From IMG/VR virus record IMGVR_UViG_3300027963_000035, positions 124,001 to 188,000 of that record: 64,000 nt of DNA. One strand, given 5' to 3'. The notes under the pieces were generated by a model, which was not told the DNA's origin, searched no databases, and worked only from the letters and a program-made list of their open reading frames with translations. Shown piece by piece: positions 22,555 to 36,216 of this stretch (within the stretch, counting starts at the first letter, position 1; every line of letters begins with the position of its first letter). Position numbers and translations under genes: made by a program.

Positions 22555-23028
22555 CTAGACTATCTGCCAATCGCAGACTACCTTGGTTGCCCCCTTGCAA
22601 CTTTGCTTGGGGAGTTGTTTCACCAACTCCCGCTTCACGTTCTCGACGCCCTCTTTGACTTCTGTGACACGATCAAGGATAGACCCTACCGCAGACTCCC
22701 CCTTGACCAACGCCGTTCTAATGCAATCTACGAGCACCCCAGTGGCAAGTGGGCCAGTCTTACGCATGGCAACCAGATCACTACGGGTGATAGTCTCTCC
22801 CTTATCCATGCGACTGATAAGGCTATCCCAAGCAGCACTAGCGGTTTCCTGCCACAGAGCCACCGATTCCAGCCAAGGGATGCTAGTGGTAGCGTCCCTT
22901 TCATAATCGTCGCCAACCTTGACCGTTCCACTGACCCGAACCGTGAAATCAACCGTATGATCCCCAACCGGAATGTTATCCCGGTCGAACTTCACTTTGC
23001 TCAGAGCCAGCATTTGAATGTCGTTCAT
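22555..23028 (-). CDS. hypothetical protein
   Basis: 157 aa, GGAG RBS, promoter motif at about 23070. Confidence 0.75.
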   Translation of the reverse strand: MNDIQMLALSKVKFDRDNIPVGDHTVDFTVRVSGTVKVGDDYERDATTSIPWLESVALWQETASAAWDSLISRMDKGETITRSDLVAMRKTGPLATGVLVDCIRTALVKGESAVGSILDRVTEVKEGVENVKRELVKQLPKQSCKGATKVVCDWQIV

Positions 23029-23085
23029 CTTCTAAACTCCAGAGGGTTGAAGGTTCCTTACACTCAGTAATCGTACCAGATACTA

Positions 23086-23271
23086 TCACCCTGCCATCTT
23101 GATTAGACACTTCAAGGACAGACCATAAAGAAACATCCCCGCACCCGATTCGGGATCAATACCACAAGAAACCATGCTGGCTTCTAATGCGTCTTGGATC
23201 ATTCTCTCTGAAGGATACTTTTTACCCTTCAAGAAGTCTTTGGCCTTAATGGCAATCTCAACAGGAGTCAT
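23086..23271 (-). CDS. hypothetical protein
   Basis: Start MTPVEIA after GGAGA; motif at 23307. Confidence 0.6.
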   Translation of the reverse strand: MTPVEIAIKAKDFLKGKKYPSERMIQDALEASMVSCGIDPESGAGMFLYGLSLKCLIKMAG

Positions 23272-23475
23272 CTGTTTTCTCCAGAGGTTGAAGTTCCTTA
23301 CACTCAACCGTACCAGATTAGAACTTTTCCCGGCGGGTTGCCTTGTTAGCGACCCGCTTGCCAAACTTGCGAAGATGCTTGCAATAACTCATTCCAACCG
23401 CCTTGCCAGCACAACGAGTCTTACGCATTTGAAACTTCCTTTTGGTTAAGGTTACAAACATTAACCGTACCAGAA

Positions 23476-23511
23476 GGAGAGGGGGGAGTTTTTTGTTTCT
23501 CCCCCCTCTCC
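23476..23511 (-). terminator. GC-rich hairpin after HTH paralog
   Basis: ggagaggggggag / ctcccccctctcc. Confidence 0.65.
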
Positions 23512-23516
23512 CCTTT

Positions 23517-23762
23517 TCACTTCCAACCCTTCATTTCCTTGTTGGCAGCGGCCACGATACTTGCCTTGTTCCGGCGAGACTTCAACTCTTTCTTAGTCTT
23601 GGGAACACAAGCACCGTTCTGACGGAGATACTTGAGACGGAGGCAAACCGCTGCCGGAGTGATTCCCAACTCCTTAGCAACACTGGTTTGGTTCCCACCA
23701 TTGTTGAGATGCCGCATGATGACATTGACGAACGTTTCAACGCTAACAGTCTGACGCTTCAT
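23517..23762 (-). CDS. small sigma-region-4-like HTH protein (paralog 1)
   Basis: VSVETFV..GGNQTSVAKELGITPAAVCLRLKYLR; motif at 23811. Confidence 0.75.
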   Translation of the reverse strand: MKRQTVSVETFVNVIMRHLNNGGNQTSVAKELGITPAAVCLRLKYLRQNGACVPKTKKELKSRRNKASIVAAANKEMKGWK

Positions 23763-23935
23763 GGTTTTGGTTCCTTATGGTTATGGTTATGGTTCAATCA
23801 ACGATAATCTACCGTACTAGTTTTCTTCTTCCGTTGGATCATAGTTACATTCATCCTCTGCATCTTCATTGTCATAACTTGGATCGTCAATCCAAGGCCA
23901 GAGGACTGTTTCTTGCATCATATCAAAGTCATCCA

Positions 23936-24124
23936 TTAGACTCTCCTTTGAGTGTTGGGTTCACAACCATCCACCGTACTGAATACTTCAACAGCGACCA
24001 GATGGGGAAGGTATCCTTTCAGAATCTCTTTGAACTCAACCTTGCCGAACTTTTCGACCGCCTCTTTATGAGTCAAGACTATTGTTTTACCCGTGTCACA
24101 ACAGGTTACTTCATACTTCTTCAT
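23936..24124 (-). CDS. hypothetical protein
   Basis: RBS and motif at 24157; reads through the motif at 23973. Confidence 0.6.
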   Translation of the reverse strand: MKKYEVTCCDTGKTIVLTHKEAVEKFGKVEFKEILKGYLPHLVAVEVFSTVDGCEPNTQRRV

Positions 24125-24171
24125 GATGAAACTCCCAGAGTTATCGGCAAGAGTTTACCGTACCGAAAGCC

Positions 24172-24384
24172 TCAGATGACCCCCTCCAAGTAGGATTCAA
24201 ACTGGACAAGCAGTTCAATCTTATTATTCTTAGGCTTGATTCCCTTTTCCTGAAGGATTCTTTTCACAATCTGGCTGACGTTGAACCTTGAGTGCTTGAG
24301 TCCCTTAGTCTCCAACTTCAATGCACTCTTGAGACTGAGCAGACGATACTTTTCAACATTCAGGCCAGTGATAACGGTAGTCAT
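24172..24384 (-). CDS. hypothetical protein
   Basis: Start MTTVITG after GAGGA; motif at 24418. Confidence 0.65.
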   Translation of the reverse strand: MTTVITGLNVEKYRLLSLKSALKLETKGLKHSRFNVSQIVKRILQEKGIKPKNNKIELLVQFESYLEGVI

Positions 24385-24434
24385 TTTTAGTCCTCTTTGT
24401 TGATGGAACAAGAGTTTACCGTACCTGATTCATT

Positions 24435-24656
24435 TCAACCAAGATAACGATACTTAGCGTCCTCAACCTTTTCATCAATATTGTAGACGGTCAAACCGAT
24501 GATGTTATGGTCGTTCCACAAAGTTTCAAAAAGATGACTAATCTTTTTGCGGTCAGTATTCTTGATATAACCCTTTTTACCGTCCTTGAACATGATCTCC
24601 AGAATATAACCACTGACCCAAGACAAACCATCGAACCACTTGATGTTCTTGAACAT
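24435..24656 (-). CDS. hypothetical protein
   Basis: Start MFKNIK after AAGGA; motif at 24694. Confidence 0.6.
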   Translation of the reverse strand: MFKNIKWFDGLSWVSGYILEIMFKDGKKGYIKNTDRKKISHLFETLWNDHNIIGLTVYNIDEKVEDAKYRYLG

Positions 24657-24691
24657 TGTTTTTTCCTTTGGGCTAGGGTTAAGACAAGAGT

Positions 24692-24901
24692 TTACCGTAC
24701 TGGATTCCAAAGATTATCTTCCCTGAGTTCCTTACGGAGCAGGGTTGCTTCCTCCAGCAACTTCCTCTGTTCAATGAGGAAGTTCTTTACTGCGGAGTCA
24801 TACTCCCCACTATTTTGGGTATCCAGAATATTCTTCTTAGTCTCCCAAATAAGAGTGCTAAGAGCCCGGTCGATGATGTTTTTTTGCTCTGGGGTCATCA
24901 C
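24692..24901 (-). CDS. hypothetical protein
   Basis: AGGAG RBS, motif at 24922; ends VR-stop inside the next motif. Confidence 0.6.
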   Translation of the reverse strand: MMTPEQKNIIDRALSTLIWETKKNILDTQNSGEYDSAVKNFLIEQRKLLEEATLLRKELREDNLWNPVR

Positions 24902-25219
24902 TTTTCTCCTTTTGGTTTTTTACCGTACCAAAAACATAAAGTTTAACCCTAGATTTAACTAGGGTTGTTGCTTTTAACACTAGCCAGTTCACCGTATAGG
25001 TTAACTGCAAGATACAGTGCTTCTCTCTTGTTAGCAGCCCATACATACCCGACAACGCCGACTCGCCAGTAAACTTCCCATTCAGTAAGCATGGTATTGG
25101 CTCCGTGGTTAATGGTTCACACCCAATCTACGTACCAAAAACTAAAAAGAAAAATCCCCCGATCATAATGAAAACTCTACGCTTAGCGTGGAATCACCAA
25201 TATGATCGGGGGAGAGTCT

Positions 25220-25624
25220 TTATTCTGCCCCTAGTGCCACTTTCACGGCATTGACCATTTGACCATAGAAACTACCGGCAAAGTTGCCCCCACACATTTC
25301 TGCTAGTTCCCGCTGAAATGCGGTTGGGGTCATTCCGCCCTTACGATTACCCTCTCTGTAGACCGTAGCCTTAGCCTTTACTTTCACAAAGTCCAGTTTG
25401 TGATTCTGACGCTCTACGGTGCGATCTGGAGCCGTAATACTAAAAGTGCCTCTTCCGGCCCGATTAGTATAAACAACCCGCCAGACTTGATCCTCGCTCG
25501 CCTTGGAGTGTCGGATGGTTCCCTTTACCATCAAGCCACCAACACGGCGAAACTCTGTGCCGTTTTCTGTCTCAAAAGGATAGAACTTGATTGGCTTGGG
25601 TTCATCAACGATTTGCCACGGCAT
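25220..25624 (-). CDS. hypothetical protein
   Basis: 134 aa, AAGGA RBS, motif at 25661, long hairpin downstream (25155-25213). Confidence 0.7.
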   Translation of the reverse strand: MPWQIVDEPKPIKFYPFETENGTEFRRVGGLMVKGTIRHSKASEDQVWRVVYTNRAGRGTFSITAPDRTVERQNHKLDFVKVKAKATVYREGNRKGGMTPTAFQRELAEMCGGNFAGSFYGQMVNAVKVALGAE

Positions 25625-25691
25625 TGTCTGATTCCTTAGTGGTGTTGGTTACAACTATAACCCGTACTAGATACTATCCCCGTAGGGATCA

Positions 25692-25907
25692 TCAACCCGT
25701 GATGACACTCAGCACTTCATCGTTGAGCGGGTTGATTACCGGATCGAACTCGACCGGAACTTCAACTTCACGCTGATTCTGGATGATGTTGACAATCGCA
25801 TTGACCAGAACCCGCTCGTTGACAGTGTAGTGACCCCGATTGTGAATCTCCTTTGAGGCTTCCATGTCCTTGAGCAACTTCAGGCGACGAGTCTTAGTAA
25901 CTTTCAT
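25692..25907 (-). CDS. hypothetical protein
   Basis: AGGAG RBS, motif at about 25943. Confidence 0.65.
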   Translation of the reverse strand: MKVTKTRRLKLLKDMEASKEIHNRGHYTVNERVLVNAIVNIIQNQREVEVPVEFDPVINPLNDEVLSVITG

Positions 25908-25955
25908 CTCTAACTCCTGAGAAGTGGAGGGAACAACACTAACCCGTACCGGATT

Positions 25956-26234
25956 CTAGTCATGCCTCTTGATTCGATAGTTCATGCCGCCCTCGACCAG
26001 CAGATTCCATCCGTAGGAATCCAATGAATCAATCAACTCCTCAAATACAAGACGATCCGGCAGGAGTGATAACATGATCTTCGGTCCATTGACCTTGCCG
26101 ATGAGCCAGTGTACCGCCCGTTCACGGTCGAATGCCGCCACCCTTTCGGGGTCGAACCGATGGATGAAGGTGCATGGGAACGGCTCTTCTCCGAACCGCT
26201 GAACCAGATCATCAATAGTGGTTTCTAACGCCAT
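25956..26234 (-). CDS. hypothetical protein
   Basis: AAGGA RBS, motif at 26266. Confidence 0.65.
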   Translation of the reverse strand: MALETTIDDLVQRFGEEPFPCTFIHRFDPERVAAFDRERAVHWLIGKVNGPKIMLSLLPDRLVFEELIDSLDSYGWNLLVEGGMNYRIKRHD

Positions 26235-26278
26235 GATTTCCTTTCGTTTCGGGTAACAACTCCCGACCGTACCGGATT

Positions 26279-26479
26279 CTAGTTGATTTCTAGAATATCT
26301 ACCCTCAAACCATCCTTATGGTAACTCTCACCCCTAGAATATCGGGGGAGGGTTGAATGAGTTACTGACGGGTCAAACTTAATAATCCAATCGTCCGCAC
26401 AACCCACTGCATCATAGTAGTTGTCGAAACTGGTAACACTCTCAGGAACACTGTCACGAATGACCATTGCAAGCCACAT
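26279..26479 (-). CDS. hypothetical protein
   Basis: AGGAG RBS, motif at 26502. Confidence 0.65.
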   Translation of the reverse strand: MWLAMVIRDSVPESVTSFDNYYDAVGCADDWIIKFDPSVTHSTLPRYSRGESYHKDGLRVDILEIN

Positions 26480-26515
26480 TTGGATTCTCCTTTGAAGTTT
26501 TACCGTACCAAATCT

Positions 26516-26722
26516 TTATGATTTGAACTGTCGGTCTTTGCTCATAATCCTGTTAACGGCAGCCCAACTCCACTGAAAACTCTTTGGGCCGTTCAACTGA
26601 GCCACAGTAGGAAACTTCTCAAGGAAGCCCACGATTTTAGCGGGCTCCCCATCAAGCCAGCAAGCATTGTCGTTCTTCCACTGTTCAACAGCAAACTCAT
26701 GATCCTCGATTGTGCTTCTCAT
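26516..26722 (-). CDS. hypothetical protein
   Basis: AGGA RBS, motif at 26769. Confidence 0.65.
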   Translation of the reverse strand: MRSTIEDHEFAVEQWKNDNACWLDGEPAKIVGFLEKFPTVAQLNGPKSFQWSWAAVNRIMSKDRQFKS

Positions 26723-26780
26723 TTTTAATCCTAGTTATTAAAAGTAAAAGTAAGGCTCACAAGTCTTTACCGTACCAAAA

Positions 26781-26827
26781 TCGACCGCTAGGATTGAACC
26801 TAGTGAATCCCCAAACGGGACGGTCGA
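26781..26827 (-). ncRNA. truncated tRNA-like element (acceptor stem, one hairpin, T arm)
   Basis: TCGACCG TCCC GTTTG GGGA TTCA CTAGG TTCAAT CCTAG CGGTCGA. Confidence 0.45.
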
Positions 26828-26990
26828 AGATTGTTTAGCGTGGGTTGTTATTATCAATGATAATAGAAATAATACCGCTACACAATCCAAGGAAGCACAT
26901 CATTTGAAGACTCTTCAGGTATTCACAACCAGTCAGATTCCCGGCTTCGACCAGGAACCAGAAACCGTACCCATGGGAAACCCCGTGGGC

Positions 26991-27026
26991 CTCACCCCCC
27001 GGCCTATTGTTTGGCCGGGGGGTGAG
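26991..27026 (-). terminator. 14-bp GC hairpin after HTH paralog
   Basis: ctcaccccccggcc / ggccggggggtgag. Confidence 0.65.
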
Positions 27027-27037
27027 TGTGACTAACT

Positions 27038-27298
27038 TCAGAGCATCTCGACGCCAAGGCTGGCGAGAATCTCCGTCGCACGCTCCTTGGTATTGCTGGT
27101 GCGACCACCACCCTCAAACTTCGGGATATTCAGCCCGTGCTTCTTCCGCAACTGGCTCAGACGCACCGACACCGAACCCGGAACGATGCCCAACTTGCTT
27201 GCAACGTCCTCGACGCTGCCACCAGCCCGCTGCACTTCGATAACCGTGGTGAGAAACGTCTCAAGATCAACACCCTTCTGACCAACTTGGCGACCCAT
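27038..27298 (-). CDS. small sigma-region-4-like HTH protein (paralog 2)
   Basis: MGRQVGQKG..GGSVEDVASKLGIVPGSVSVRLSQLRKK; AGGAG RBS; motif at 27377. Confidence 0.8.
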   Translation of the reverse strand: MGRQVGQKGVDLETFLTTVIEVQRAGGSVEDVASKLGIVPGSVSVRLSQLRKKHGLNIPKFEGGGRTSNTKERATEILASLGVEML

Positions 27299-27396
27299 AG
27301 TAATCATCTCCTGCTTATAGTTACCAACCCTTTGGTTCCCGCTTGCCTCATTGGCTTGCTGTCGGAACAAACCCTAACCGTACCGAATCTTATCCT

Positions 27397-27660
27397 TTAC
27401 CGATTATGACAACGGAAACCGTCTCTCCGTGTCATATTTGCTTCAATCTCCCTAAAAAGATCCCTCATAGCCAGATAGTTCTTAAACTCTGGCTCCTTTT
27501 CAAACTGTGTAGCGGCTTCGATAAGGCTTGAAACCGGCTTCACAGTCTCCCTTGCGTAATAATCTTCAAGGAAACCAAGAGTGTATCGGTCAAGACCACT
27601 ACTGGTTTTTGTATCGTCTGGCATTTTTTCTCTCCAGAAACCGTAAAAACTGTTTTCCAT
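27397..27660 (-). CDS. hypothetical protein (predicted leaderless)
   Basis: ATG 8 nt after TACGGA. Confidence 0.65.
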   Translation of the reverse strand: MENSFYGFWREKMPDDTKTSSGLDRYTLGFLEDYYARETVKPVSSLIEAATQFEKEPEFKNYLAMRDLFREIEANMTRRDGFRCHNR

Positions 27661-27871
27661 ATCTCTGCTCCGTACTAAAAACTAATCTTCGGGGTGAGGG
27701 CCGGGAACACCGTTGAAAAACGGGTTTGGCATCCAAACATCATAATCAGTTAAAATCCATTGACGTTCTGGATGTTCGGCCCCAACATGAAGTGCGTATT
27801 CCCGCATTGCATCAATAGGTTTTGCAAGTTCATCTGGCATCAATCGTCTCCTTTTTTATTGGAACGATAGT

Positions 27872-28078
27872 CTACCGTACCGAAAAGTCACTCTCACACC
27901 AGCCCATAGCCTCCGCCATGTCCTTCTTTATTCCCGGGATCGTCCAAACATTGGCTTCCTGCCTTGATGCTTGCCAACCCTTGAAGGGAACATATCGGAG
28001 TTGATACACAATATCTCCCTCTTTTGCTTCGTAATACGGCTTTGTATTATACCGATTCTTTTTCTTTTGCCAAAGCAT
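27872..28078 (-). CDS. hypothetical protein
   Basis: GAGGAG RBS; ends SVR-stop inside the motif. Confidence 0.6.
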   Translation of the reverse strand: MLWQKKKNRYNTKPYYEAKEGDIVYQLRYVPFKGWQASRQEANVWTIPGIKKDMAEAMGWCESDFSVR

Positions 28079-28123
28079 TGTTATTCTCCTCTGGTTGATA
28101 ACTGTACCTGATCTTACCTGATC

Positions 28124-28444
28124 TTACCTCTTGTAGAGATAACTACCATAGGGATCACAAACTTCGACCAACCTTTGAATATCGTTCACAACATTAAATC
28201 TTGCTCCATTTTTGGCCGGAGCCTTCCAACTTGCTGCCTTATAAATATCCCCATTTTCGTCTATAAAGGCATGGACACTTTTGTTAGCACCCCACAGCGG
28301 TTCCCCGTTACTATCCAGCCAACGCTCTTGACGAACCACTCTAGTATACTTTCGCCCCGGTTCAAGAATGTATTTAGTCTCAGCCCCAGTGGTGTTAGAC
28401 TTCTCAGTCAAAGCAGCGAGCCAAAGTTCGACTTGTTCTTGCAT
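28124..28444 (-). CDS. conserved phage protein
   Basis: GRKY..V...SVHAFID..GD.YKAASWKAPAK pattern common in large phages. Confidence 0.75.
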   Translation of the reverse strand: MQEQVELWLAALTEKSNTTGAETKYILEPGRKYTRVVRQERWLDSNGEPLWGANKSVHAFIDENGDIYKAASWKAPAKNGARFNVVNDIQRLVEVCDPYGSYLYKR

Positions 28445-28476
28445 TGTTATTTCTCCTCTGTTGCCTATTCACCGTA

Positions 28477-28785
28477 CTAAATCAGATTCCGGCCCTTCAG
28501 CCATTCATAGACAACACCGCTGGCGTTGTTGATCTTCATATTATCATTCTGGCAGTCGTTAATAAGGTTGATTAACAATACCCTATTGATATTAACGCCC
28601 TTAACGGGAAGATGCCACCAATCCCCAATATCACAAAACTCCAGTCTAAGGTATTCTAATACCTTGTCCCGATAGTTTTTCCTTGAGGCAAGATCGTGTT
28701 TATTGTATCCCTTGTGGGCGTCGTGACCCTTCACGTTCTTAGTCCCCCACCAATCTTCATAGAATCCATCGTAGAAGTCGTTCAT
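28477..28785 (-). CDS. hypothetical protein
   Basis: AGGAG RBS; TAG stop overlaps the motif at 28471. Confidence 0.65.
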   Translation of the reverse strand: MNDFYDGFYEDWWGTKNVKGHDAHKGYNKHDLASRKNYRDKVLEYLRLEFCDIGDWWHLPVKGVNINRVLLINLINDCQNDNMKINNASGVVYEWLKGRNLI

Positions 28786-28812
28786 TGTGTTTCTCCTTGA
28801 TGATTGATCGTA

Positions 28813-29025
28813 CTAGAAAAGTTCTCTATAGCCGGGGAACTCGTCAATATATCCCACCTGCCATTCAGTACCATCCTCAGCAATCATGGTTTTAATCTTA
28901 GAGGTTGGCTTGTAAAGTGCATTGACCAAAGTATCAATCGCCCAAAAGAAACTCGCTACGATCACAACCATACCAACAAGACTAGTCAGATACATACCGA
29001 TGATGAAAATGTCTGTTGTTGTCAT
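28813..29025 (-). CDS. small membrane protein
   Basis: N-terminal TM helix; motif at 29062. Confidence 0.6.
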   Translation of the reverse strand: MTTTDIFIIGMYLTSLVGMVVIVASFFWAIDTLVNALYKPTSKIKTMIAEDGTEWQVGYIDEFPGYRELF

Positions 29026-29059
29026 CTTTATTACTCTTTAGTGATGTTAGGACAAATCT

Positions 29060-29242
29060 TTACCGTACCAAAATCTGACGGAGTTCATCAGAGAGAGTTT
29101 TTTCTCGCTCCAGAGTTTCAACAATACTACCCAGCCTCATGCTAATGAAGTTGAGAGTATCAGGCTCAACCATACCCTGACTATTCAGGGGAGCAGTATC
29201 CACAAAAATCCTGAGCATCTTGAGAGTATCAATGGTATCCAT
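29060..29242 (-). CDS. hypothetical protein
   Basis: AAGGA RBS; ends LVR-stop in the motif. Confidence 0.55.
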   Translation of the reverse strand: MDTIDTLKMLRIFVDTAPLNSQGMVEPDTLNFISMRLGSIVETLEREKTLSDELRQILVR

Positions 29243-29575
29243 TAGTTCAATCCTTTAGCGACAGAAATAAAGAGGAATATAGATAAAAAGATAACTAGTC
29301 CAGAAAATCAAGAAAGCCAAAATGCCTAGACCACTAACCATACCAAACGTGTCAACATCATCTGGATGTTCACCAAACAGATTGTAGCAAATCCAGTTTT
29401 TCATTGTGAAAACTTTCCTGCGAGAAATCCAAGACAAAATACAATATTCAGAATCGGTAGAATGAACACAAAAAAGATAAAACAAGCACGATACATTTTC
29501 TTTTCCTTAGAAGTATCCATACTGGTCTAACGTCCAGTGGCGTTTTTGACTTCCACCGCTTATAGGATACCTGTA

Positions 29576-29749
29576 CTAGAAACTTTCAAATGCGTCCCAG
29601 AATCCCACCTTATTGCCGTTAGAGTCTTTGAGAACCCCATCATCCCCTGCTTTAATGTTAGAGGGGATTTGAGTTAGAATCTCACCCAGTTCGTTGGGGT
29701 TATCATTAAAACTAGCGTTGTCCATGTTCACTTCAATAATGATTTTCAT
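29576..29749 (-). CDS. hypothetical protein (predicted leaderless)
   Basis: MKIIIEVNMDNASF..DSNGNKVG, 57 aa, ATG 8 nt after TACGGT at 29758; below ORF-track cutoff. Confidence 0.6.
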   Translation of the reverse strand: MKIIIEVNMDNASFNDNPNELGEILTQIPSNIKAGDDGVLKDSNGNKVGFWDAFESF

Positions 29750-29763
29750 ATTTATTCACCGTA

Positions 29764-29988
29764 CTAAAAAGGATAATCTTCGGGCCACTCTTGACTCTGA
29801 CTATATATTTCCATTTCATCATAGTGGGCATTGAGTTCTGGATCATTAGTAAGTTCAACATAATGACCCCGTTCACAAACGATGTTACGCTTCTCCAGAA
29901 TCTTATAGATGATTCTTTCGGCGTTAGTAAGATCGGCAACGCTAATGCCGATGATAGCCCGTGCGATTTGTTCCAGTTCAGTGTTCAT
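29764..29988 (-). CDS. hypothetical protein
   Basis: AGGAG RBS, motif at 30013. Confidence 0.65.
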   Translation of the reverse strand: MNTELEQIARAIIGISVADLTNAERIIYKILEKRNIVCERGHYVELTNDPELNAHYDEMEIYSQSQEWPEDYPF

Positions 29989-30228
29989 CTTTTGCTCCTT
30001 GGGTAAGGTGGAACCGTACTAGATGTTATTGAACTCTGTGCTAAGATACTTCATATCTTCACCGCACTTTTCGCATACCGGGGTTCCGGCATCTTCATAC
30101 CACCACGGAGTAACATGAGTAACACAATCACAATCTGCACAACGCCAAACGTGACGGAGTTTAGTATCGTCGATAACAGTCCAGTTTTCCATTTTATTCT
30201 CCTTGAGTAAGTTGGAACCGTACCAGAA

Positions 30229-30531
30229 TCAACGAATCGTGTTGTTGGGCGTCTGACAAATCATAATCTGCTGCTGAGATTGTGAGGACTGATTTACCAC
30301 AGCAATCTCCATAGAGCCTTGCTGATTGACCCTGCACCAATATGTTCCGGTAGAATCACTCCAATACCGGTAGTTATTATCATAGCCCCTATAGACATTG
30401 TATTGGGGTTCAACACGATGATACTTCCTTGCCTCCACAATCGTATGAACAACAGGGGCGGCTTCCTTACCACACTGGAGACAAGCAACAAGTAATCCAA
30501 CAACTAAACTGGCAATCTGAAGGTAAAACAT
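30229..30531 (-). CDS. hypothetical protein with signal/TM segment
   Basis: Hydrophobic N-terminus, motif at 30574. Confidence 0.65.
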   Translation of the reverse strand: MFYLQIASLVVGLLVACLQCGKEAAPVVHTIVEARKYHRVEPQYNVYRGYDNNYRYWSDSTGTYWCRVNQQGSMEIAVVNQSSQSQQQIMICQTPNNTIR

Positions 30532-30595
30532 TTTCTAATCCTTTGAAGAATGTTTGTTTCGGAACAACCCACAACCGTACCAAAATCAACTATCT

Positions 30596-30898
30596 TTAAC
30601 AAGCCAAATCTTCATTTTTATCTGCGAGGTAGTTTTTGTTTTCTTCACAATCTTCTACCAAGCGAGAATACAAAAATCTTTGTTCAGGGGTATTTTTGTT
30701 TTTGTATACTAAGCCCTGCCCCCGATTCCAGTTGGGTGCAAGGAATATGGCAGAGGCTAAGAGGTCTAACTCCTCATGCAAGAAGTCAATCGTAAAACCA
30801 TTGTTCCTCAGATCATTCGCAGCATTTTCAATGTTTTGATAAACCTTGAAGTTAGTGTATGGATGAACTGGGTCAAAAACAACAAATACAGTTTTCAT
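30596..30898 (-). CDS. hypothetical protein
   Basis: AAGGA RBS, motif at 30927. Confidence 0.65.
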   Translation of the reverse strand: MKTVFVVFDPVHPYTNFKVYQNIENAANDLRNNGFTIDFLHEELDLLASAIFLAPNWNRGQGLVYKNKNTPEQRFLYSRLVEDCEENKNYLADKNEDLAC

Positions 30899-30938
30899 GT
30901 TATCTTCCTTTATTGTCTTTCACACAACCGTACCAAAA

Positions 30939-31142
30939 TCAACTATCCTTTAGACATTCCCTGATCATTTGGATTAGATTAGAAGCGTCACCCAAAGCCG
31001 CAGATTCAAAATCATTTTCAAGATTTTCAGCGACATTATCAAGGATTGTCTCGATATTTCGTAGTGCAATAGCAGTATCCTTTGACGATACAGGCCAGTC
31101 AATACCAAGAGCCTCTGCTATTTGTTTCTTGGTTATTCTCAT
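30939..31142 (-). CDS. hypothetical protein
   Basis: AAGGA RBS. Confidence 0.6.
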   Translation of the reverse strand: MRITKKQIAEALGIDWPVSSKDTAIALRNIETILDNVAENLENDFESAALGDASNLIQMIRECLKDS

Positions 31143-31187
31143 TATTTTCCTTTTGTATTGATATACCGGCTGAGAATGGATCGACTT

Positions 31188-31266
31188 ATGGAACGATGGG
31201 ATTTGAACCCATAACTCCTCTTGCTTTTAAAGCAAGTGGAACTCTATCCAGTTGAGTTACGCTCCA
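31188..31266 (-). tRNA. atypical tRNA-like RNA with elongated anticodon arm (loop UU UAA AA)
   Basis: TGGAGCG/CGTTCCA acceptor, ACTC/GAGT D stem, ATGGG TTCAAAT CCCAT T arm; anticodon arm 23 nt instead of 17. Confidence 0.7.
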
Positions 31267-31516
31267 CGATAGTTTCACAAATAGTGTCCGGTATCACGCA
31301 CTATTCAACCTTATTTAGGTTTCTATCCGACCCCTGACGCATTTATATTGAATCTGTGCCGGGAATCCAACCCGGATAGAGAGCAGCATAAGCCTCACCA
31401 TAGCCTAGTTCGGCAACCCCATACACCCATTAGATGCAGACGCTGTTTGCTGGGCTATCTCTCTACTGTCGGCAGACACACAGTTTGTATCTCGTTGACT
31501 CCACACCGTACCAAAA

Positions 31517-31795
31517 TCAATCGTTCTCGTATATGCCCTTAGTATATTCTTTTGGAATGATTGGACACCAACCTTTAGCCTTTTCATTATCATAAGGCAT
31601 CCAGAATGGAGCATCACAAGCGTCTACTACTCCGAACTTATTATTCACAAAGATATGAGGACAAAGTTTAGTCCCCTTTATTTCACGTTCTTCATAATGG
31701 TATTTGCCAATACCGATCCCAATATTAGGGCCGAAGTAATAAACTTCCTGATCCTTTTCTGGAGGGAAGTTATGACTGCTTTTCCATGTGTTCAT
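31517..31795 (-). CDS. hypothetical protein (predicted leaderless)
   Basis: ATG 8 nt after TACGGT at 31804. Confidence 0.65.
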   Translation of the reverse strand: MNTWKSSHNFPPEKDQEVYYFGPNIGIGIGKYHYEEREIKGTKLCPHIFVNNKFGVVDACDAPFWMPYDNEKAKGWCPIIPKEYTKGIYEND

Positions 31796-31801
31796 GTTTT
31801 T

Positions 31802-32011
31802 CTACCGTACCGAATACAGACTGGCGATTGTTTCACCGTCAAAGTTTTTGTTTAATTCTTTTATATACTTCTCGGCTGATTCTTTATTCTGCCATTTAAC
31901 TACAAATGGCTTTTGGTGAATATCACCTTTATCGGTAACTGGCTTGTGATCCTTATAAACCACAAACCAGCGGCCTTCTTCTTTCACAGAATAGTTATTT
32001 GATCGTTTCAT
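31802..32011 (-). CDS. hypothetical protein
   Basis: Follows tRNA-Glu; ends SVR-stop in the motif. Confidence 0.55.
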   Translation of the reverse strand: MKRSNNYSVKEEGRWFVVYKDHKPVTDKGDIHQKPFVVKWQNKESAEKYIKELNKNFDGETIASLYSVR

Positions 32012-32023
32012 GTTGTTTAAAAG

Positions 32024-32095
32024 TACCCCGTGCCGGTAACGCTCCGGCGTCCCTGAGATGAAAGCCCAGTATACTAACTTCTATACGAACGGGGC
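32024..32095 (-). tRNA. trnE: tRNA-Glu(UUC)
   Basis: GCCCCGT/ACGGGGT acceptor, CTGGG CT TTC AT CTCAG anticodon arm, T loop AGCGTTA; motif 10 nt upstream. Confidence 0.85.
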
Positions 32096-32136
32096 ATGGT
32101 TGTTTACCGTACCAAAAACAATATAGTCTATAACAA

Positions 32137-32174
32137 ATAAAAAATAAACCCCCTCCGTTTTACGGGAGGGGGTT
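32137..32174 (-). terminator. intrinsic terminator after HTH paralog
   Basis: aaccccctccg / cgggagggggtt hairpin with T-rich tail on the minus strand. Confidence 0.7.
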
Positions 32175-32206
32175 CGTATGGCCGATTATTATATCAGCCT
32201 TTAACT

Positions 32207-32461
32207 TCAACCAACCCCAAGGCTGGCGAGAATCTCAGCCGCCCGCTCTGCGGTGTTGCTGGTGCGGCCCGACCCCTCGAACCGGGGGACGTTCACACCG
32301 TGCTTCTTCCGCAGTTGCGAGAGACGCACCGACACCGAACCGGCCGTGATGCCCAGAGCATCGGCAACGTCCTGCACCGAACCGCCGGCCCGCTGCGTCT
32401 CGACCACCGTGGTCAGGAACTTCTCCAGAGCGACACCCTTCTGTCCAACTTGACGACCCAT
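32207..32461 (-). CDS. small sigma-region-4-like HTH protein (paralog 3)
   Basis: GGSVQDVADALGITAGSVSVRLSQLRKK; very GC-rich codons; motif at 32535. Confidence 0.8.
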   Translation of the reverse strand: MGRQVGQKGVALEKFLTTVVETQRAGGSVQDVADALGITAGSVSVRLSQLRKKHGVNVPRFEGSGRTSNTAERAAEILASLGVG

Positions 32462-32571
32462 AGTAGTAATCTCCTGCGTTATTCAACCCTTTGTTGCCGT
32501 TTGCCGAAGTGGCTCACCGTCGCAACGTCCATCAACCGTACCAAAAGACAAGTTTCTCTGTTTATTTCTTT

Positions 32572-32895
32572 TTATTTCTGGAATGAGTTCAGAGTTATAT
32601 TCGTTAACTCAGTTGAAACTTCTTCAAGTTCCTTCTGTATTTCCTTCTTCCTTCTCGCTAGTCTCTTAACCTTTTCGGCTTCTTTAATCTTCACACTATT
32701 GTCAAACTGTTTAATGCAATCAAGCATTAAAGTTTCAACATCATTGCCTGTACTAAAAGTTACTTCGCCATAATCGCCATCTCTAACCGTAACCCTAAAT
32801 CCACGGACATGATTACCGATTATAAAGTTTCTTCCGAAACCTTTTGATAAGAAAAGTTTTACTTTAGGGTGTAGCATACTCATATTATTCTGCAA
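32572..32895 (-). CDS. hypothetical protein
   Basis: 107 aa, C-terminal coiled coil. Confidence 0.6.
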   Translation of the reverse strand: MQNNMSMLHPKVKLFLSKGFGRNFIIGNHVRGFRVTVRDGDYGEVTFSTGNDVETLMLDCIKQFDNSVKIKEAEKVKRLARRKKEIQKELEEVSTELTNITLNSFQK

Positions 32896-33247
32896 ACCTT
32901 AGTGGACTATTGTTATTATTTTCGTCTACAGGGTTCGCAGAAGAAACAATTTCATTCACAGAAGGTTTGAAACTAACCGTCACAGAACTAGCATCACGGC
33001 GGGTCATGCCAGTCGCTAGGCAGAAACTAAGTTTAGCATCACTTTCTTCCTTCCTAAATTCCTCTAGGATTTGATCCTGAGTTACAGGTTCACCCATAAG
33101 GTTACTAACCGTACCTCCAAAGATTTCCATAACTTCACAGATTCCGCCGTACCACATAGTGGCATCACCGGGATCGCAGTTATAAATATTGAGCCTGTCC
33201 TCAATGTTGTTGAGTTTAACAGTGCAATAATAACGATAATGTTCCAT
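32885..33247 (-). CDS. hypothetical protein
   Basis: AAGGA RBS, motif at 33274. Confidence 0.65.
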   Translation of the reverse strand: MEHYRYYCTVKLNNIEDRLNIYNCDPGDATMWYGGICEVMEIFGGTVSNLMGEPVTQDQILEEFRKEESDAKLSFCLATGMTRRDASSVTVSFKPSVNEIVSSANPVDENNNNSPLRFAE

Positions 33248-33441
33248 TTTTTCTATCCTTTCGTTACTACTCTACCGTACCAAAAACTATCGGGCCGTTT
33301 CTTCCTTAACTGTTTCCATGACAATTAAATTTTCATCATAAGGAAGATTATCCAAAAAATTATGTAATTTTTCTGGATTTTCATATGGGTCGTATTTGAT
33401 TTGCCCTTGTTCATAGTAAATGTGAACGTAAAACATTACTA

Positions 33442-33654
33442 TTATTTAGCAGACCTGTATTCAACCTGAATAGTAGAATTTCTACTAACCATCTTCACAA
33501 AATTTGAAACACTTTCCCAATCAGGACTAGAGTCAATATACAACTCTTTTTCAGACCCGGGGAAGGCACTCAGTAAATATATTTCAAAACCACCGGAAGG
33601 ATACTCACCATCAACATATGGTTTATTTGTATTGATTACAATGTATTGTTTCAT
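33442..33654 (-). CDS. hypothetical protein
   Basis: ATGA overlap with the upstream gene. Confidence 0.6.
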   Translation of the reverse strand: MKQYIVINTNKPYVDGEYPSGGFEIYLLSAFPGSEKELYIDSSPDWESVSNFVKMVSRNSTIQVEYRSAK

Positions 33655-34004
33655 TCAAAACTTTTCAACAGTACCACATTTGGAAAGTAGTTCCAAACAT
33701 TACTGGGGTATTCTGAACTATTGTTTAATATGGGCTCGCCACTAATATACCAGTTGAAATCTTTCTGGTAAATATTTCTACCTTCACAAAATTTACGAAG
33801 GATACAATTAAGCCGGCTCTTGGTAACATATGTAGTGTATCCCTGATTATTAATCCCTACAGTCTTGTTGGTAATTTTAGCAATCAGGTTATTAAACAAA
33901 AAGACAAGAATCACATCATCGGCAACTTCAACCCTAGTGTTGCCACAAGAATGATTCTTCTTGTTCAAGATGCTATCAATCATCTCTTGTTCAATCTTAC
34001 GCAT
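33651..34004 (-). CDS. conserved phage protein
   Basis: MRKIEQEM...GNT.V...G..T..TKSRLN pattern; motif at 34038. Confidence 0.7.
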   Translation of the reverse strand: MRKIEQEMIDSILNKKNHSCGNTRVEVADDVILVFLFNNLIAKITNKTVGINNQGYTTYVTKSRLNCILRKFCEGRNIYQKDFNWYISGEPILNNSSEYPSNVWNYFPNVVLLKSFE

Positions 34005-34127
34005 CTTCTTCCTCAAGAGGGAGGTCGGGAAACTCCAACCGTACCAGAAACTATGTGGTTGAGAGAATGATTTAATGCGTTGATTGGTATATATAATACA
34101 TATAACCAAAAATCAAAAGGAGTATAT

Positions 34128-34595
34128 ATGAATAGCTGTAAATATTGCAATAGAACTATAAACAATAAAGGCTCTCTTGCATCTCATGAATTATGTTGTC
34201 AAAATAATCCCAAAAGAGTCAAAAGAATAAAATCACCAAAAGCAGGTGTTCAAAAAGGTTGCATACCTTGGAACAAAGGCAAAAAATTTGATGAAATAAC
34301 CTCCGCCAGTTTAAAAGAAAAAATAGAAAGTGGACAATATAAAACGTTTTGTGAATATCATGCTCGTAAATTAATAAAAAAATACTTAATACAAACACAT
34401 GGACATAAGTGTATAATGTGCGGATTATCGGAATGGCTAGGAGTCAGAATTCCCTTAGTTTGTGATCATATAGATGGTAATGCTGAAAATCATGATTTAT
34501 CTAACATGAGAATTATATGTAATAATTGCGATTCAATAACTGCAACTTTTAAAGGAAGAAACAGAGGCAAAGGAAGGAAAAATAGATATAAATAA
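34128..34595 (+). CDS. HNH endonuclease
   Basis: CIMCG..W....PL..DHIDGN..N....N.R.ICNNCD. Confidence 0.85.
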   Translation: MNSCKYCNRTINNKGSLASHELCCQNNPKRVKRIKSPKAGVQKGCIPWNKGKKFDEITSASLKEKIESGQYKTFCEYHARKLIKKYLIQTHGHKCIMCGLSEWLGVRIPLVCDHIDGNAENHDLSNMRIICNNCDSITATFKGRNRGKGRKNRYK

Positions 34596-34664
34596 AGTTT
34601 AGAATAGTATATACCTATAGATTAACAATGACGTTAATCATGTTTTTTTAAAAGGAGTTTTATT

Positions 34665-35120
34665 ATGAGTGCAACAACATCACAAGGCACAGGTTTAGGA
34701 ATGGCCCCTAACCAAGTTTGTTTAACAGCCGCTGGCCCTCACATTGTCGCTGCTGGCATTGCCAGAACAGGAACTGTAGGATCAGACGGACAAACTAACA
34801 ATTGGTGGATCACAGTTGATTTAGAAGAAGTATTACCTTTAAATCCAGATATGTATAGTGTTATACTAACACAATGCGACGAAGAAGGTGCTTTACAAGG
34901 CGAGAATGGTCAAAGACCAAACCACGGCCCTCACGTTGAAAAATACGTTAAGGTCAATGGAACTCGTTATAACAAGTATGGTATTGACGATGAGTTCGAT
35001 AACTATGATAACTGGAAGAACAATGGTTTAGCTGGTTTCGTTATTCACTCAGGTGACGGCGATCCACACACCATGCAATACGTTGTAGTAAGAAATGGTT
35101 TCTTAAGACTAAGTAACTAA
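34665..35120 (+). CDS. hypothetical protein, possibly structural
   Basis: AAGGAG RBS, followed by a terminator. Confidence 0.7.
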   Translation: MSATTSQGTGLGMAPNQVCLTAAGPHIVAAGIARTGTVGSDGQTNNWWITVDLEEVLPLNPDMYSVILTQCDEEGALQGENGQRPNHGPHVEKYVKVNGTRYNKYGIDDEFDNYDNWKNNGLAGFVIHSGDGDPHTMQYVVVRNGFLRLSN

Positions 35121-35148
35121 TAATTTAACTAAAAACACATTCGGTGTT

Positions 35149-35178
35149 AACCCCAAGACTAACCTCTTGGGGTTTTTT
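35149..35178 (+). terminator. intrinsic terminator between convergent genes
   Basis: aaccccaag / cttggggtt followed by a T run. Confidence 0.75.
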
Positions 35179-35407
35179 ATTGTACCAAACCCTTTTGTAT
35201 CTGCCAATTCTTATGCTCCATAACAACGTCGATATTATTACGAAGTAGATTATCAGGAGCAGTATCACAATACAAACTAATCATCTCGAGAATATCGTCT
35301 AAACTATTCTTGAGAATATTATCTTGAGTTAAACTCTTTGAATAAGAAAGTTTACTGGCGATCTTGCAAAAGAGTATGGCCTGTTCCTTATCCATAAGAT
35401 TCACCAT
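35177..35407 (-). CDS. hypothetical protein
   Basis: 76 aa, coupled to HTH paralog 4. Confidence 0.55.
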   Translation of the reverse strand: MVNLMDKEQAILFCKIASKLSYSKSLTQDNILKNSLDDILEMISLYCDTAPDNLLRNNIDVVMEHKNWQIQKGLVQ

Positions 35408-35631
35408 TGTGGCACAGGGGCTCCCTTAGCCCGGAGTTTATGACAACGCTGCCTTACTGCTTGAGGAGAGATCCCCAATTCATTTGCAACACTAATACTG
35501 TTTCCGCCATTCTTAACGGCTTCTACAATACTCTTGAGGAAAACGTCAAGGGGGATTCTCTTATTCTTCTTCTGAGTGGCTTCAGTTTCACCACCAAGAA
35601 TGAAATCACTAAAGTCAATATCGTCTAGCAT
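35401..35631 (-). CDS. small sigma-region-4-like HTH protein (paralog 4)
   Basis: IPLDVFL..GGNSISVANELGISPQAVRQRCHKLR; motif at 35659. Confidence 0.75.
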   Translation of the reverse strand: MLDDIDFSDFILGGETEATQKKNKRIPLDVFLKSIVEAVKNGGNSISVANELGISPQAVRQRCHKLRAKGAPVPQW

Positions 35632-35847
35632 CTAGAGTTCTCCGTGTGACACCCTCACACCGTACCAGATTCTACCGTTCTCTCTACCCAGATTTCACAA
35701 CCAAACTTCATTCTGGCGAATCTATTTGCGTCCCATTCGCTATAAGCAGATACATACCCTGCTATTCGGTTGTTCTTCCAAACAATCCAAGTATATTTTT
35801 CCATAATACCTCTATTATAATCTAATAGAGGATATTGGTCAATACAT

Positions 35848-36201
35848 TTAAACACCACTCTTAAGAGCCCGATTAGTAGCAATCTTCACACCCAGTTTAC
35901 GATTAAACATTCCGCCTGCTGGAACATTAAACTTACCCCTCAGATCACGACCATCAGGAGTAGTAATCTCCACAATAGTAAAGCCGCCCTTGCAACTGAG
36001 TTCCCAGTTCACACTTTGAACTAAGTTGTTAAATTGTTCATATTCACGCTTGCTCATATATTCGTGAATAATTTCTGGAGAGTTAGCATGATCCGGAGTA
36101 ACACAACGGAGATAAACCCGTCCGTGATAAACACGAACCTTATAACCAGTCTTACGAAGAACTTCTACGTTTGGCATTTCAATTTTAGTCAAGGTAGTCA
36201 T
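35848..36201 (-). CDS. hypothetical protein
   Basis: 117 aa, AAGGA RBS. Confidence 0.65.
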   Translation of the reverse strand: MTTLTKIEMPNVEVLRKTGYKVRVYHGRVYLRCVTPDHANSPEIIHEYMSKREYEQFNNLVQSVNWELSCKGGFTIVEITTPDGRDLRGKFNVPAGGMFNRKLGVKIATNRALKSGV

Positions 36202-36216
36202 AATTAAATTTCCTTT

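What the first reader, a model, noticed from the sequence alone, without database searches (positions are those of the whole stretch)
23035..35670. Cassette-like architecture: the motif supplies the stop codon of upstream genes and leaders are duplicated
Seen: unrelated genes end in VR-stop encoded by GTACGGTA(A/G) (24692, 27872, 29060, 31802). Others have a TAG stop that forms the first bases of the motif (near 23817, 28477, 28813, 29576, 29764, 30019), and one ORF (23936) reads through a motif. Neighbouring unrelated genes share near-identical leaders: a ~45-bp repeat at 23035-23080 and 23278-23317, caagagtttaccgtac three times at about 24148, 24409 and 24685, and acaaccgtaccaaaatcaactatc at 30571 and 30924. 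Inference: the motif doubles as a recombination joint for gaining, losing and shuffling promoter-gene cassettes, similar in concept to PeSL regulatory cassettes of T4-type phages.
Basis: partly seen in the sequence, partly recalled or inferred. Interest (0 to 1): 0.7.

Follow-up and report, generated by a model that had tools for sequence, protein, structure and literature searches.

The report
Promoter-like motif bounding phage gene cassettes
In a huge T4-related freshwater phage, nearly every small gene and tRNA gene in a 17-kb stretch is preceded by the same short signal (GGTACGGT), and related strains differ by whole signal-plus-gene units cut exactly at that signal, which is a new-looking version of the known "PeSL" cassette shuffling of T4-type phages.

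Summary
On the minus strand, GTACGG occurs 48 times in the window and never on the plus strand. GGTACGGT is the most over-represented 8-mer of the 251-kb phage contig. It lies 27-55 nt upstream of the start codons of small genes and 4-32 nt upstream of tRNA genes. About ten upstream ORFs end inside it, either as VR-stop or as a TAG fused to the core.

The contig has a T4-type portal and terminase and is about 50% complete. Two close strains (G001, L014) and two Logan runs differ from the window by 23 indels or replacements in the array. In 8-10 of them both ends lie in motif copies, and in 7-9 one end does. Eight of 18 pure indels are flanked by exact repeats of 10-38 nt, mostly containing the core. 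One strain-specific cassette carries a leader hairpin typical of another lineage.

Reordering was barely seen. The element is not a canonical PeSL, because it has no sigma-70 consensus and no general stem-loop. Promoter function is inferred from position, strand, class restriction and the RNA genes, not shown. The start site is unresolved. New variant of a known kind; moderate interest.

The parts
22362..38923 (-). Hyperplastic array of about 45 small genes, 3 tRNA genes and 1 structured RNA gene, with 41 exact GTACGG cores plus at least 5 degenerate ones. It is a GC island (41-48% against 30-34% in the flanks).
23308..38918 (-). Single motif copies. The first base of GTACGG on the minus strand is at 38918, 37883, 37487, 36776, 35665, 34044, 33280, 32541, 32112, 31810, 31511, 30933, 30580, 30223, 30019, 29764, 29068, 28477, 27880, 27675, 27383, 26970, 26775, 26508, 26272, 25949, 25667, 24928, 24700, 24424, 24163, 23979, 23817, 23470 and 23313. 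Two copies inside a gene are at 33152 and 33114. Degenerate copies lie near 35180, 29576, 28813, 25131 and 23070. Consensus: T-W-G-W-W-T-Y-Y-G/A-GTACGG-T, then TTGT at +13 to +16.
22357..22495 (-). Four motif copies in tandem (22495, 22463, 22430, 22362; the first three are 32-33 nt apart). They lie after a terminator-like hairpin and ahead of the 434-aa gene.
27676..27880 (-). Motif-to-motif cassette (one small ORF) absent from G001, X8 and X9. The junction there is a hybrid of the two motif copies.
26509..26775 (-). Motif-to-motif cassette (68-aa ORF 26516-26722) absent from G001 and L014. G001 carries a duplicated partial motif as a scar.
27676..28477 (-). 802-nt block of cassettes absent from L014. 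The crossover lies in the shared TTTAGTACGG.
25668..25949 (-). Cassette (ORF 25692-25907) absent from L014, with both ends in motif copies.
24929..25135 (-). Cassette between a degenerate copy (GGTACGTAG) and the copy at 24928. It is absent from G001 and L014, with a 12-nt exact flank repeat.
23071..23313 (-). It is absent from L014.
32023..32095 (-). tRNA-Glu, 17 nt downstream of the motif at 32112 and just after a strong terminator hairpin (32146-32175). G001 has a different tRNA-Glu cassette at this place.
37382..37455 (-). tRNA-Lys, 32 nt downstream of the motif at 37487.
31187..31267 (-). tRNA-Leu, in the same cassette as the structured RNA behind the motif at 31511. The whole block 30589-31464 is missing from G001 and X8.
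31350..31490 (-). tRNA-shaped structured RNA of about 135 nt, conserved in other phage lineages.
34080..34595 (+). HNH homing-endonuclease gene on the opposite strand. Together with ORF 34665-35120 it replaces a tRNA-Ser cassette of G001 between two motif copies.
36810..37421 (+). Second HNH endonuclease gene, inside a replacement bounded by the motif copies at 37487 and 36776.
27038..27298 (-). One of five paralogous small helix-turn-helix proteins. The others are at 32207-32461, 37557-37811, 23517-23762 and 35401-35631. Each lies behind a motif, with a long leader in the three closest paralogs (72-85 nt).

Best explanation
GGTACGGT, with its T-rich upstream half, is the core of a class-specific transcription start signal (promoter). 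It precedes almost every small gene, tRNA gene and one structured-RNA gene in a hyperplastic, probably early, region of a huge T4-related freshwater phage. The genes are packed so tightly that upstream ORFs run up to or into the signal, which happens to carry stop codons in two frames (TAG at -2, TAR at +6). Because the signal and parts of the leaders are repeated about every 400 bp in one orientation, they act as short-homology substrates for recombination within and between co-infecting relatives. That recombination deletes, inserts and replaces promoter-plus-gene units in register. This is how PeSL elements work in T4-type phages.

Shown: the motif statistics, its geometry, its conservation in relatives, and the in-register junctions. 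Inferred: promoter function, the position of the start site, and homology-driven rather than enzyme-directed recombination.
For: Strand and class restriction. The contig has 75 minus and 6 plus copies. All are in 140-250 kb, and only 3 lie in the 0-140 kb structural half, even where genes there are on the minus strand. G001 has 61 forward and 1 reverse.

Geometry. Stops lie at -29 to +8 and starts at +27 to +55 relative to the core.

Action at the RNA-synthesis level rather than translation. Six of the seven RNA genes in the arrays of W and G001 lie 4-32 nt behind a copy. One of these lies directly after a strong terminator hairpin.

Positional analogy. In other phages the same structured RNA is preceded by textbook promoters (TTGACA-N16-TAGAAT in L033, TACAAT in L032). 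These sit at the same distance from the conserved ACAAUACAAAC block as TACGGT does in the window.

Conservation. The core is kept in relatives with only 70-84% nt identity: G002 21/2, L015 24/1, L016 13/0 and L005 20/3.

Recombination. There are 23 events, with the junction sequences shown. Eight of 18 pure indels have exact flank repeats of 10-38 nt, against a null 95th percentile of 10. The uniform-null p is 7e-10. The same joints recur in independent runs of 2019 and 2025. The G001-only cassette carries a leader hairpin that is absent from the 251-kb contig but present 7 times in L005 and 4 times in L016.

T4-type portal and terminase are present. PeSL properties are taken from PMC4122927.
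Against: No transcription start site was observed. The only RNA run gave three contigs over one gene.

The motif matches no known promoter consensus. Sigma-70-like sites are not enriched (47 against 37.6 +/- 7.1) and do not coincide with it.

No RNA polymerase, sigma region 2, integrase or RecA/UvsX family was detected in the 251- and 323-kb fragments.

The two ways of reading the start site conflict. If TGG-TACGGT is an extended -10, the start lies near +13. But two G001 tRNAs begin at +4 and +6.

The enrichment of breakpoints is not significant against an 'any intergenic position' null. Six events use other sites.

Homologs of one cassette gene sit in arrays that carry other motifs. Genes therefore also move, or persist, without this motif.
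Confidence: 0.62

Rival explanations
1. The motif is the target of a site-specific recombinase, as in an integron-like cassette system. Cassettes are cut and pasted at a fixed point in GTACGG, and any regulatory role is secondary.
For: In every motif-bounded event the crossover interval includes the core. One insertion starts exactly at the first G of GTACGG (event at 23313). In G001 a foreign tRNA-Glu cassette starts inside the core, at GTAC|GG.
Against: No tyrosine integrase was found in 574 kb of two genomes, though both are incomplete. The motif has no inverted repeat or hairpin like attC. The flank repeats extend to 27-54 nt of leader. There are slippage-type scars (the duplicated tcgattttGGTACG in G001) and events at Shine-Dalgarno or 3-nt microhomology. 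The motif is also kept in front of conserved genes that do not vary.
Confidence: 0.08
2. The motif acts in RNA. It may be a processing site that cuts long early transcripts into single-gene mRNAs and tRNA precursors, or a sequence-specific pause or terminator together with the T-run upstream.
For: The motif is strictly strand-specific. A T-rich tract lies directly upstream of the core. It lies between almost all genes, and tRNAs begin at variable distances after it, some at +4 to +6.
Against: It follows strong intrinsic terminators, where a new start is needed. It stands where bona fide promoters stand in front of the same RNA gene in other phages. Four tandem copies ahead of one gene fit starts or binding sites better than cleavage sites. 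No conserved structure accompanies it.
Confidence: 0.15
3. The motif is an operator. It would be an asymmetric binding site for a phage DNA-binding protein, such as the five HTH paralogs in the array, that switches the whole gene class on or off. Stoperators of cluster A mycobacteriophages, or a MotA-box-like activator site, would be the comparison.
For: The site is asymmetric, lies in one orientation relative to transcription, and overlaps stop codons in short intergenic spaces. This matches what I recall of L5 stoperators (my own knowledge, not checked here). Five HTH paralogs are encoded in the array. The CGG inside a TAnnnT frame is invariant, which a sigma-70 -10 element would not require.
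Against: The motif is restricted to one region and one strand rather than being genome-wide. No test of binding was possible. The HTH family shows only generic similarity. This reading is compatible with, rather than exclusive of, a promoter role.
Confidence: 0.1
4. The coincidence of breakpoints and motif is only a filter effect. Indels arise anywhere, and only those with intergenic ends survive. Since the motif fills most of each short intergenic space, breakpoints appear to sit at it.
For: Against a null in which each end has a 0.6 chance of lying near the motif, 8 of 23 is not significant (p = 0.63). Non-motif events exist, including an in-frame gene fusion.
Against: The junctions are in register and leave exactly one hybrid copy. 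The exact flank repeats of 10-38 nt are far above the null, which random end-joining would not give.
Confidence: 0.05

Closest known systems
PeSL / PmSL elements of T4-type phages (Arbiol et al. 2010, PMC2839356; Comeau et al. 2014, PMC4122927)
   Same: Both occur in a T4-type genome, in a hyperplastic region of small ORFans and tRNAs. A conserved regulatory element lies in nearly every intergenic space, followed by a Shine-Dalgarno sequence and a start codon. Closely related phages differ by insertions, deletions and replacements whose ends lie in these elements. Degraded or duplicated copies are found at the joints. Homing endonucleases also contribute.
   Different: The conserved part is a GC-containing 8-mer with a T-rich 5' half, not TTGACA-N17-TATAAT or a Mot box. 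There is no general stem-loop or terminator component. Copies are much denser, at 41 in 17 kb. The element often overlaps the upstream stop codon. The host genome is a huge phage of about 0.5 Mb, related only distantly to cultured T4-likes (terminase at most 32% identical; 52% to the 595-kb LR756511). Mini-circles were not tested.
Integron gene cassettes (attC / attI / IntI)
   Same: Both are arrays of short single-gene units in one orientation, bounded by a repeated site at which units are gained and lost.
   Different: No integrase was found. The site is a short linear motif without the imperfect inverted repeats of attC. Every unit appears to carry its own start signal rather than sharing one Pc promoter.
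Stoperators of cluster A mycobacteriophages (from my own knowledge; not checked in a paper here)
   Same: Both are asymmetric 13-nt-scale sites in one orientation relative to transcription, lying in short intergenic spaces and often overlapping stop or start codons.
   Different: Here the sites are confined to one gene class on one strand. No repressor or lysogeny functions are seen, and the site precedes RNA genes and follows terminators.
Other small-gene arrays found here (L029, L030, L032-L036)
   Same: The layout is the same: a lineage-specific repeated element about 40 nt upstream of nearly every small gene. L029 even shares the format, with GTAC at 0 and GTKKTYC at +12 to +18. They also share homologous cassette contents (the 68-aa protein and the tRNA-shaped RNA).
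   Different: The repeated sequences differ: TAATTGTACCC in L029, AAAACGATTTT-N6-GGTTGGTTA in L030, and GCTTGACA-type sigma-70 -35 boxes in L032 and L036.

Membership tests
PeSL (promoter-early stem-loop) elements | Host genome is a T4-type myovirus | tested here: met
   Portal_T4 (gp20) at E = 3e-75, and T4-type terminase N and C domains. tblastn of the terminase hits T4-like cyanophages and Flavobacterium phages.
PeSL (promoter-early stem-loop) elements | Located between small variable ORFs of a hyperplastic region, followed by a Shine-Dalgarno sequence and a start codon | tested here: met
   Starts lie 27-55 nt downstream, with AAGGAG-type Shine-Dalgarno sequences.
PeSL (promoter-early stem-loop) elements | Contains a sigma-70-like early promoter (-35 and -10 boxes, N17 spacing) | tested here: not met
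   Sigma-70-type sites are not enriched and do not coincide with the motif. The position-weight matrix shows no -35 box at the right distance. TACGGT fits only the TAnnnT skeleton.
PeSL (promoter-early stem-loop) elements | Stem-loop (terminator) just upstream of the promoter | tested here: not met
   Hairpins precede only a few copies (23470, 26970, 32112, 37487, 22495). Regions upstream and downstream of the motif fold no better than coding controls.
PeSL (promoter-early stem-loop) elements | Indels and replacements between close relatives have their ends in the elements | tested here: met
PeSL (promoter-early stem-loop) elements | Excised mini-circles formed between tandem elements | not testable with these tools
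   This needs outward-facing PCR or raw read pairs. The Logan contigs showed no such joint. An apparent deletion joint at 26782 was an artefact.
Integron | IntI-type tyrosine recombinase next to the array | tested here: not met
   PF00589 is absent from G000 and G001. Both records are incomplete (50% and 64%).
Integron | attC sites with paired inverted repeats that fold as hairpins | tested here: not met
   The motif is linear and asymmetric, with no excess structure around it.
Sigma-54 promoter (TGGCACG-N4-TTGC) | GG and GC elements exactly one helical turn apart | tested here: not met
   The motif reads TGGTACGG-N7-TTGT. The spacing is 4 nt too long, and the L029 variant lacks GG.

The most novel reading that the evidence does not exclude
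The motif is not read by the host's housekeeping transcription machinery. It would instead be the start signal of a dedicated, still unidentified phage transcription system. That system could be a specificity factor such as the five-member HTH family encoded in the array, or a polymerase in the missing half of the genome. Every early RNA would then begin with, or directly after, GGUACGGU. Related huge-phage lineages would carry co-evolving variants (TAATTGTACCC, TCTTCTAGTACGGTCT). The same signal would define the units of gene exchange among these phages.
Probability: 0.2. Interest if true: 0.75.

Novelty: new variant of a known kind. Interest (0 to 1): 0.5.

Why it matters
Huge phages are known almost only from metagenomes, and how they are transcribed and how they acquire their hundreds of ORFan genes is largely unknown. 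This locus offers three things:

- a concrete candidate start signal that marks a whole gene class;
- natural strain variants showing that promoter-plus-gene units are the currency of gain and loss;
- evidence that the PeSL principle, described for cultured T4-type coliphages and vibriophages, extends to a distant half-megabase lineage using a quite different signal.

The motif could be used to annotate early genes and small RNA genes in these genomes, and to look for the factor that reads it.

Tried and rejected
1. Deletion joint. A loose end at 26782 in runs X5 and X6 looked like a 2.3-kb motif-to-motif deletion. One search, which covered both sides, shows no joint. The loose end was a 19-nt second-place match of a contig lying at 28597-29329. 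I retracted it.
2. Leader hairpins. Leaders at +4 to +44 fold no better than the upstream or coding controls (mean z = -0.39 against -0.75 and -0.27). There is therefore no general stem-loop in this genome, although the L005 lineage has a conserved one.
3. Sigma-54 reading. Rejected on spacing.
4. Bacteroidetes-type promoter (TTTG ... TAnnTTTG). Rejected on spacing, and because the array uses strong Shine-Dalgarno sequences.
5. Phage-encoded polymerase or sigma. PF00940, PF00562, PF00623 and PF04542 gave nothing in G000 or G001. For PF00940 the control genomes did not ring either, so that search is uninformative.
6. Megablast and tblastn against the phage collection with the array and with the 434-aa gene found nothing.
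7. The 595-kb relative LR756511 does not carry the motif.
8. PHROG, Pfam and PDB searches on the HTH paralogs gave only generic helix-turn-helix similarity.
9. My crude whole-genome gene calls were too noisy to classify copies as intergenic or coding. I used only the regional distribution from that call.
10. No protein-DNA complex prediction was run, because that tool gives no verdict for DNA partners.

Full report
WHAT THE WINDOW IS

The window is bases 124001-188000 of a single 251,265-bp virus contig with 35.7% GC. CheckV estimates it at about 50% complete. It was assembled from a freshwater metagenome and recurs in many lake samples.

It encodes a T4-type portal (gp20 family, interrupted by an intein) and a T4-type large terminase. 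The nearest record by terminase is a 595-kb uncultured huge phage, LR756511, at 52% identity. Cultured relatives are at most 32% identical. It is therefore a distant, very large member of the T4 superfamily.

THE OBSERVATION

The genes in 22.3-39 kb run on the minus strand. There the hexamer GTACGG occurs 48 times in the window and never on the plus strand. In the contig it occurs 75 times on the minus strand and 6 times on the plus strand, and GGTACGGT is the most over-represented 8-mer.

From 187 non-identical copies in seven related genomes, the consensus is T(-9) W G W W T(-4) Y Y G/A | GTACGG | T, with a weaker TTGT at +13 to +16.

In the array, the upstream ORF stops between -29 and +8 relative to the core. 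The next start codon, preceded by an AAGGAG-type ribosome-binding site, lies at +27 to +55, and at +72 to +85 for three paralogous genes.

- Four ORFs end in VR-stop read from GTA-CGG-TAR.
- Six ORFs end in a TAG fused to the core. Two of those cores are degenerate.
- One ORF contains a copy of the motif.
- The three leader repeats exist.

Extended leader similarity is limited to a few neighbouring pairs.

WHAT THE MOTIF IS LIKELY TO DO

It is class-specific. All but three copies lie in the 140-250 kb half of the contig, which is full of small minus-strand genes. The structural half has almost none, even where its genes are on the minus strand. G001 shows the same pattern, with 61 forward and 1 reverse.

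It is not a translation signal, because RNA genes have it too:
- tRNA-Glu, tRNA-Lys and a structured RNA in the window;
- tRNA-Lys, tRNA-Ser and a different tRNA-Glu in G001.

These begin 4-32 nt after the core. The tRNA-Glu copy lies about 25 nt after a strong terminator hairpin, where a new start is needed.

The structured RNA gives a useful comparison. In other phage lineages the same RNA is preceded by textbook promoters, TTGACA-N16-TAGAAT in L033 and TACAAT in L032. Their -10 hexamers lie 8-11 nt from the conserved ACAAUACAAAC block. TACGGT in the window is 11 nt from that block.

I therefore read the motif as the core of a promoter. It is not a canonical one. Sigma-70-type sites are neither enriched in the array nor coincident with the motif. 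No -35 box appears at the proper distance. The CGG inside the TAnnnT frame is invariant.

Two readings of the start site remain:
- T-n-T-G-n-TACGGT as an extended -10 element, with the start near +13.
- The T-rich hexamer at -9 to -4 as the -10 element, with the start at about 0 to +4.

The second reading is favoured by two G001 tRNAs that begin at +4 and +6. The first is favoured by the comparison with L033 and L032. Sequence alone cannot decide between them.

The one RNA library that holds this DNA gave only three contigs, over the HTH gene at 26847-27335. No polymerase or sigma family was detected in the two large fragments.

ARE THE CASSETTES REALLY UNITS OF GAIN AND LOSS?

Four close relatives were compared:
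- G001, a 323-kb IMG/VR contig that is 92-97% identical across the array.
- L014, a third strain on a 23.9-kb contig.
- Logan contigs of two later samples, X8 (2019) and X9 (2025).

Chaining the alignments gave 23 distinct indels or replacements inside the array.

- Both ends near a copy. In 8 events both ends lie within 20 nt of a motif copy. Two more have ends inside 37- and 54-nt leader repeats that contain the motif.
- One end near a copy. This holds for 7-9 events.
- Neither end near a copy. This holds for 6 events.

The junction sequences are the strongest evidence. Where the window has an extra cassette (27880 to 27675, 26775 to 26508, 28477 to 27675, 25949 to 25667, about 25131 to 24928), the relative carries a single hybrid copy. 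That copy has the upstream flank of the first motif copy and the downstream flank of the second. The converse holds for cassettes found only in G001 or L014.

Eight of 18 pure indels are flanked by exact direct repeats of 10-38 nt, and six of those repeats contain the core. The 95th percentile for random segments, searched in the same way, is 10 nt.

G001 also shows a slippage-like scar, a duplicated tcgattttGGTACG.

Several events are replacements between the same two motif copies:
- HNH endonuclease genes in the window where G001 has a tRNA-Ser cassette.
- Two different tRNA-Glu cassettes at the same place.
- A different segment ending in a tRNA-Lys gene in G001 where the window has its own tRNA-Lys and an HNH gene.

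The G001-type joints recur in X8 and X9, and an L014-type insertion recurs in X9. The variants are therefore real and persistent, not assembly errors.

The cassette found only in G001 has a leader hairpin, GTCAGCGATTGAGACTGAC. This hairpin is absent from the whole 251-kb contig but occurs 7 times in L005 and 4 times in L016. That points to import from another lineage.

LIMITS

Against uniform placement the enrichment is overwhelming, at p about 7e-10. Against a conservative null in which any intergenic breakpoint survives, it is not significant, at p = 0.63. The argument for motif-mediated recombination therefore rests on the in-register junctions and the flank repeats.

Other short homologies are used as well. 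In L014 a 77-nt piece of another cassette's leader and 5' coding end was inserted at AAAGGAA of a ribosome-binding site. An 819-nt deletion with 3-nt microhomology fused two genes in frame. This looks like general short-homology recombination in which the motif is simply the commonest repeat.

No integrase was found, and the motif has no attC-like structure.

Gene order is collinear in all relatives. Reordering, which would be 'shuffling' in the strict sense, was seen only for the 77-nt fragment.

An apparent 2.3-kb deletion joint was an artefact.

THE STOP-CODON OVERLAP

Close relatives keep the VR tails. A G002 homolog of the gene ending at 29060 (45% identical) ends in ...MINM-stop, five bases before the motif. 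Homologs of other genes stop 3-6 nt before it. The overlap is therefore a variable by-product of tight packing next to a signal that carries stops in two frames. It is not a conserved part of the proteins.

COMPARISON WITH KNOWN SYSTEMS

PeSL elements are described in PMC4122927 (read) and PMC2839356. They are composite stem-loop plus sigma-70-like early promoter plus Shine-Dalgarno units. They lie in the hyperplastic regions of T4-type phages, and indels and replacements between close relatives occur at them.

The present array works like that and lies in a T4-type genome. It fails two defining features, the sigma-70 consensus and the stem-loop. It is also much denser. I file it as a new variant of that kind, not as a member in the strict sense.

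The same layout with other repeated elements exists in unrelated-looking arrays that share cassette contents with this one: TAATTGTACCC in L029, AAAACGATTTT-N6-GGTTGGTTA in L030, and GCTTGACA in L032 and L036. L029 even shares the spacing between GTAC and a GTKKTYC box. This suggests a family of lineage-specific start signals.

VERDICT

Promoter function is probable but unproven. Novelty: a new variant of a known kind. Interest: 0.5.

Noticed in passing
window 31350-31490 (minus strand); also L030:8625-8815, L032, L033, L034, L035: A conserved structured RNA of about 135 nt with a tRNA-like outline: a closing stem, a D-like hairpin, an insert of about 90 nt and a T-arm (GGGTTGGATTCCCG). It is 96% identical between the window and an otherwise unrelated contig. 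Of 45 predicted pairs, 10 show compensatory changes. There is no Rfam match at E <= 0.1, and ARAGORN does not call it. G001 retains only its first roughly 47 nt.
   Followed up: partly
window 27038-27298, 32207-32461, 37557-37811, 23517-23762, 35401-35631 (all minus strand): Five paralogous small helix-turn-helix proteins inside the array. Three are 81-83% identical, with long conserved leaders and terminator-like hairpins after them. The only metatranscriptome contigs laid on 23000-29000 cover the first of these genes (26847-27335). They are candidates for a factor that reads the motif.
   Followed up: partly
window 22000-34000: The cassette array is a GC island, at 41-48% GC against 30-34% in the flanking DNA and 35.7% for the contig.
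   Followed up: no
window 22362-22495 and 20697-22001 (minus strand): Four motif copies stand in tandem, the first three 32-33 nt apart. They precede a 434-aa gene whose C-terminal two thirds are replaced between the window and G001 (53% aa identity overall), although the flanks are 92-97% identical at the DNA level. G001 also has a SET-domain gene inserted on the opposite strand between the two.
   Followed up: partly
window 34080-34595 and 36810-37421 (plus strand): Two low-GC HNH homing-endonuclease genes are inserted against the direction of the array. G001 has tRNA cassettes at these places.
   Followed up: partly
L017:11459-13969 (contig 11459-13969): The T4-type portal gene carries an intein (Intein_splicing domain at residues 115-331).
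   Followed up: no
L014:5480-5570 compared with window 29944 and 29125: In strain L014 an 819-nt deletion with 3-nt microhomology fuses genes 29764-29988 and 29060-29242 in frame, giving a chimeric small protein.
   Followed up: partly
L029 (Logan contig, 25.8 kb), L030, L005/L006: Other small-gene arrays carry their own repeated upstream elements. L029 has TAAAWTAATTGTACCC-N6-GTGTTCGA (31 GTACC on the coding strand in 9 kb). L030 has AAAACGATTTT-N6-GGTTGGTTA. L005 has TCTTCTAGTACGGTCT followed by a conserved hairpin GTCAGC-N7-GACTGAC, in cassettes about 330 nt apart.
   Followed up: partly
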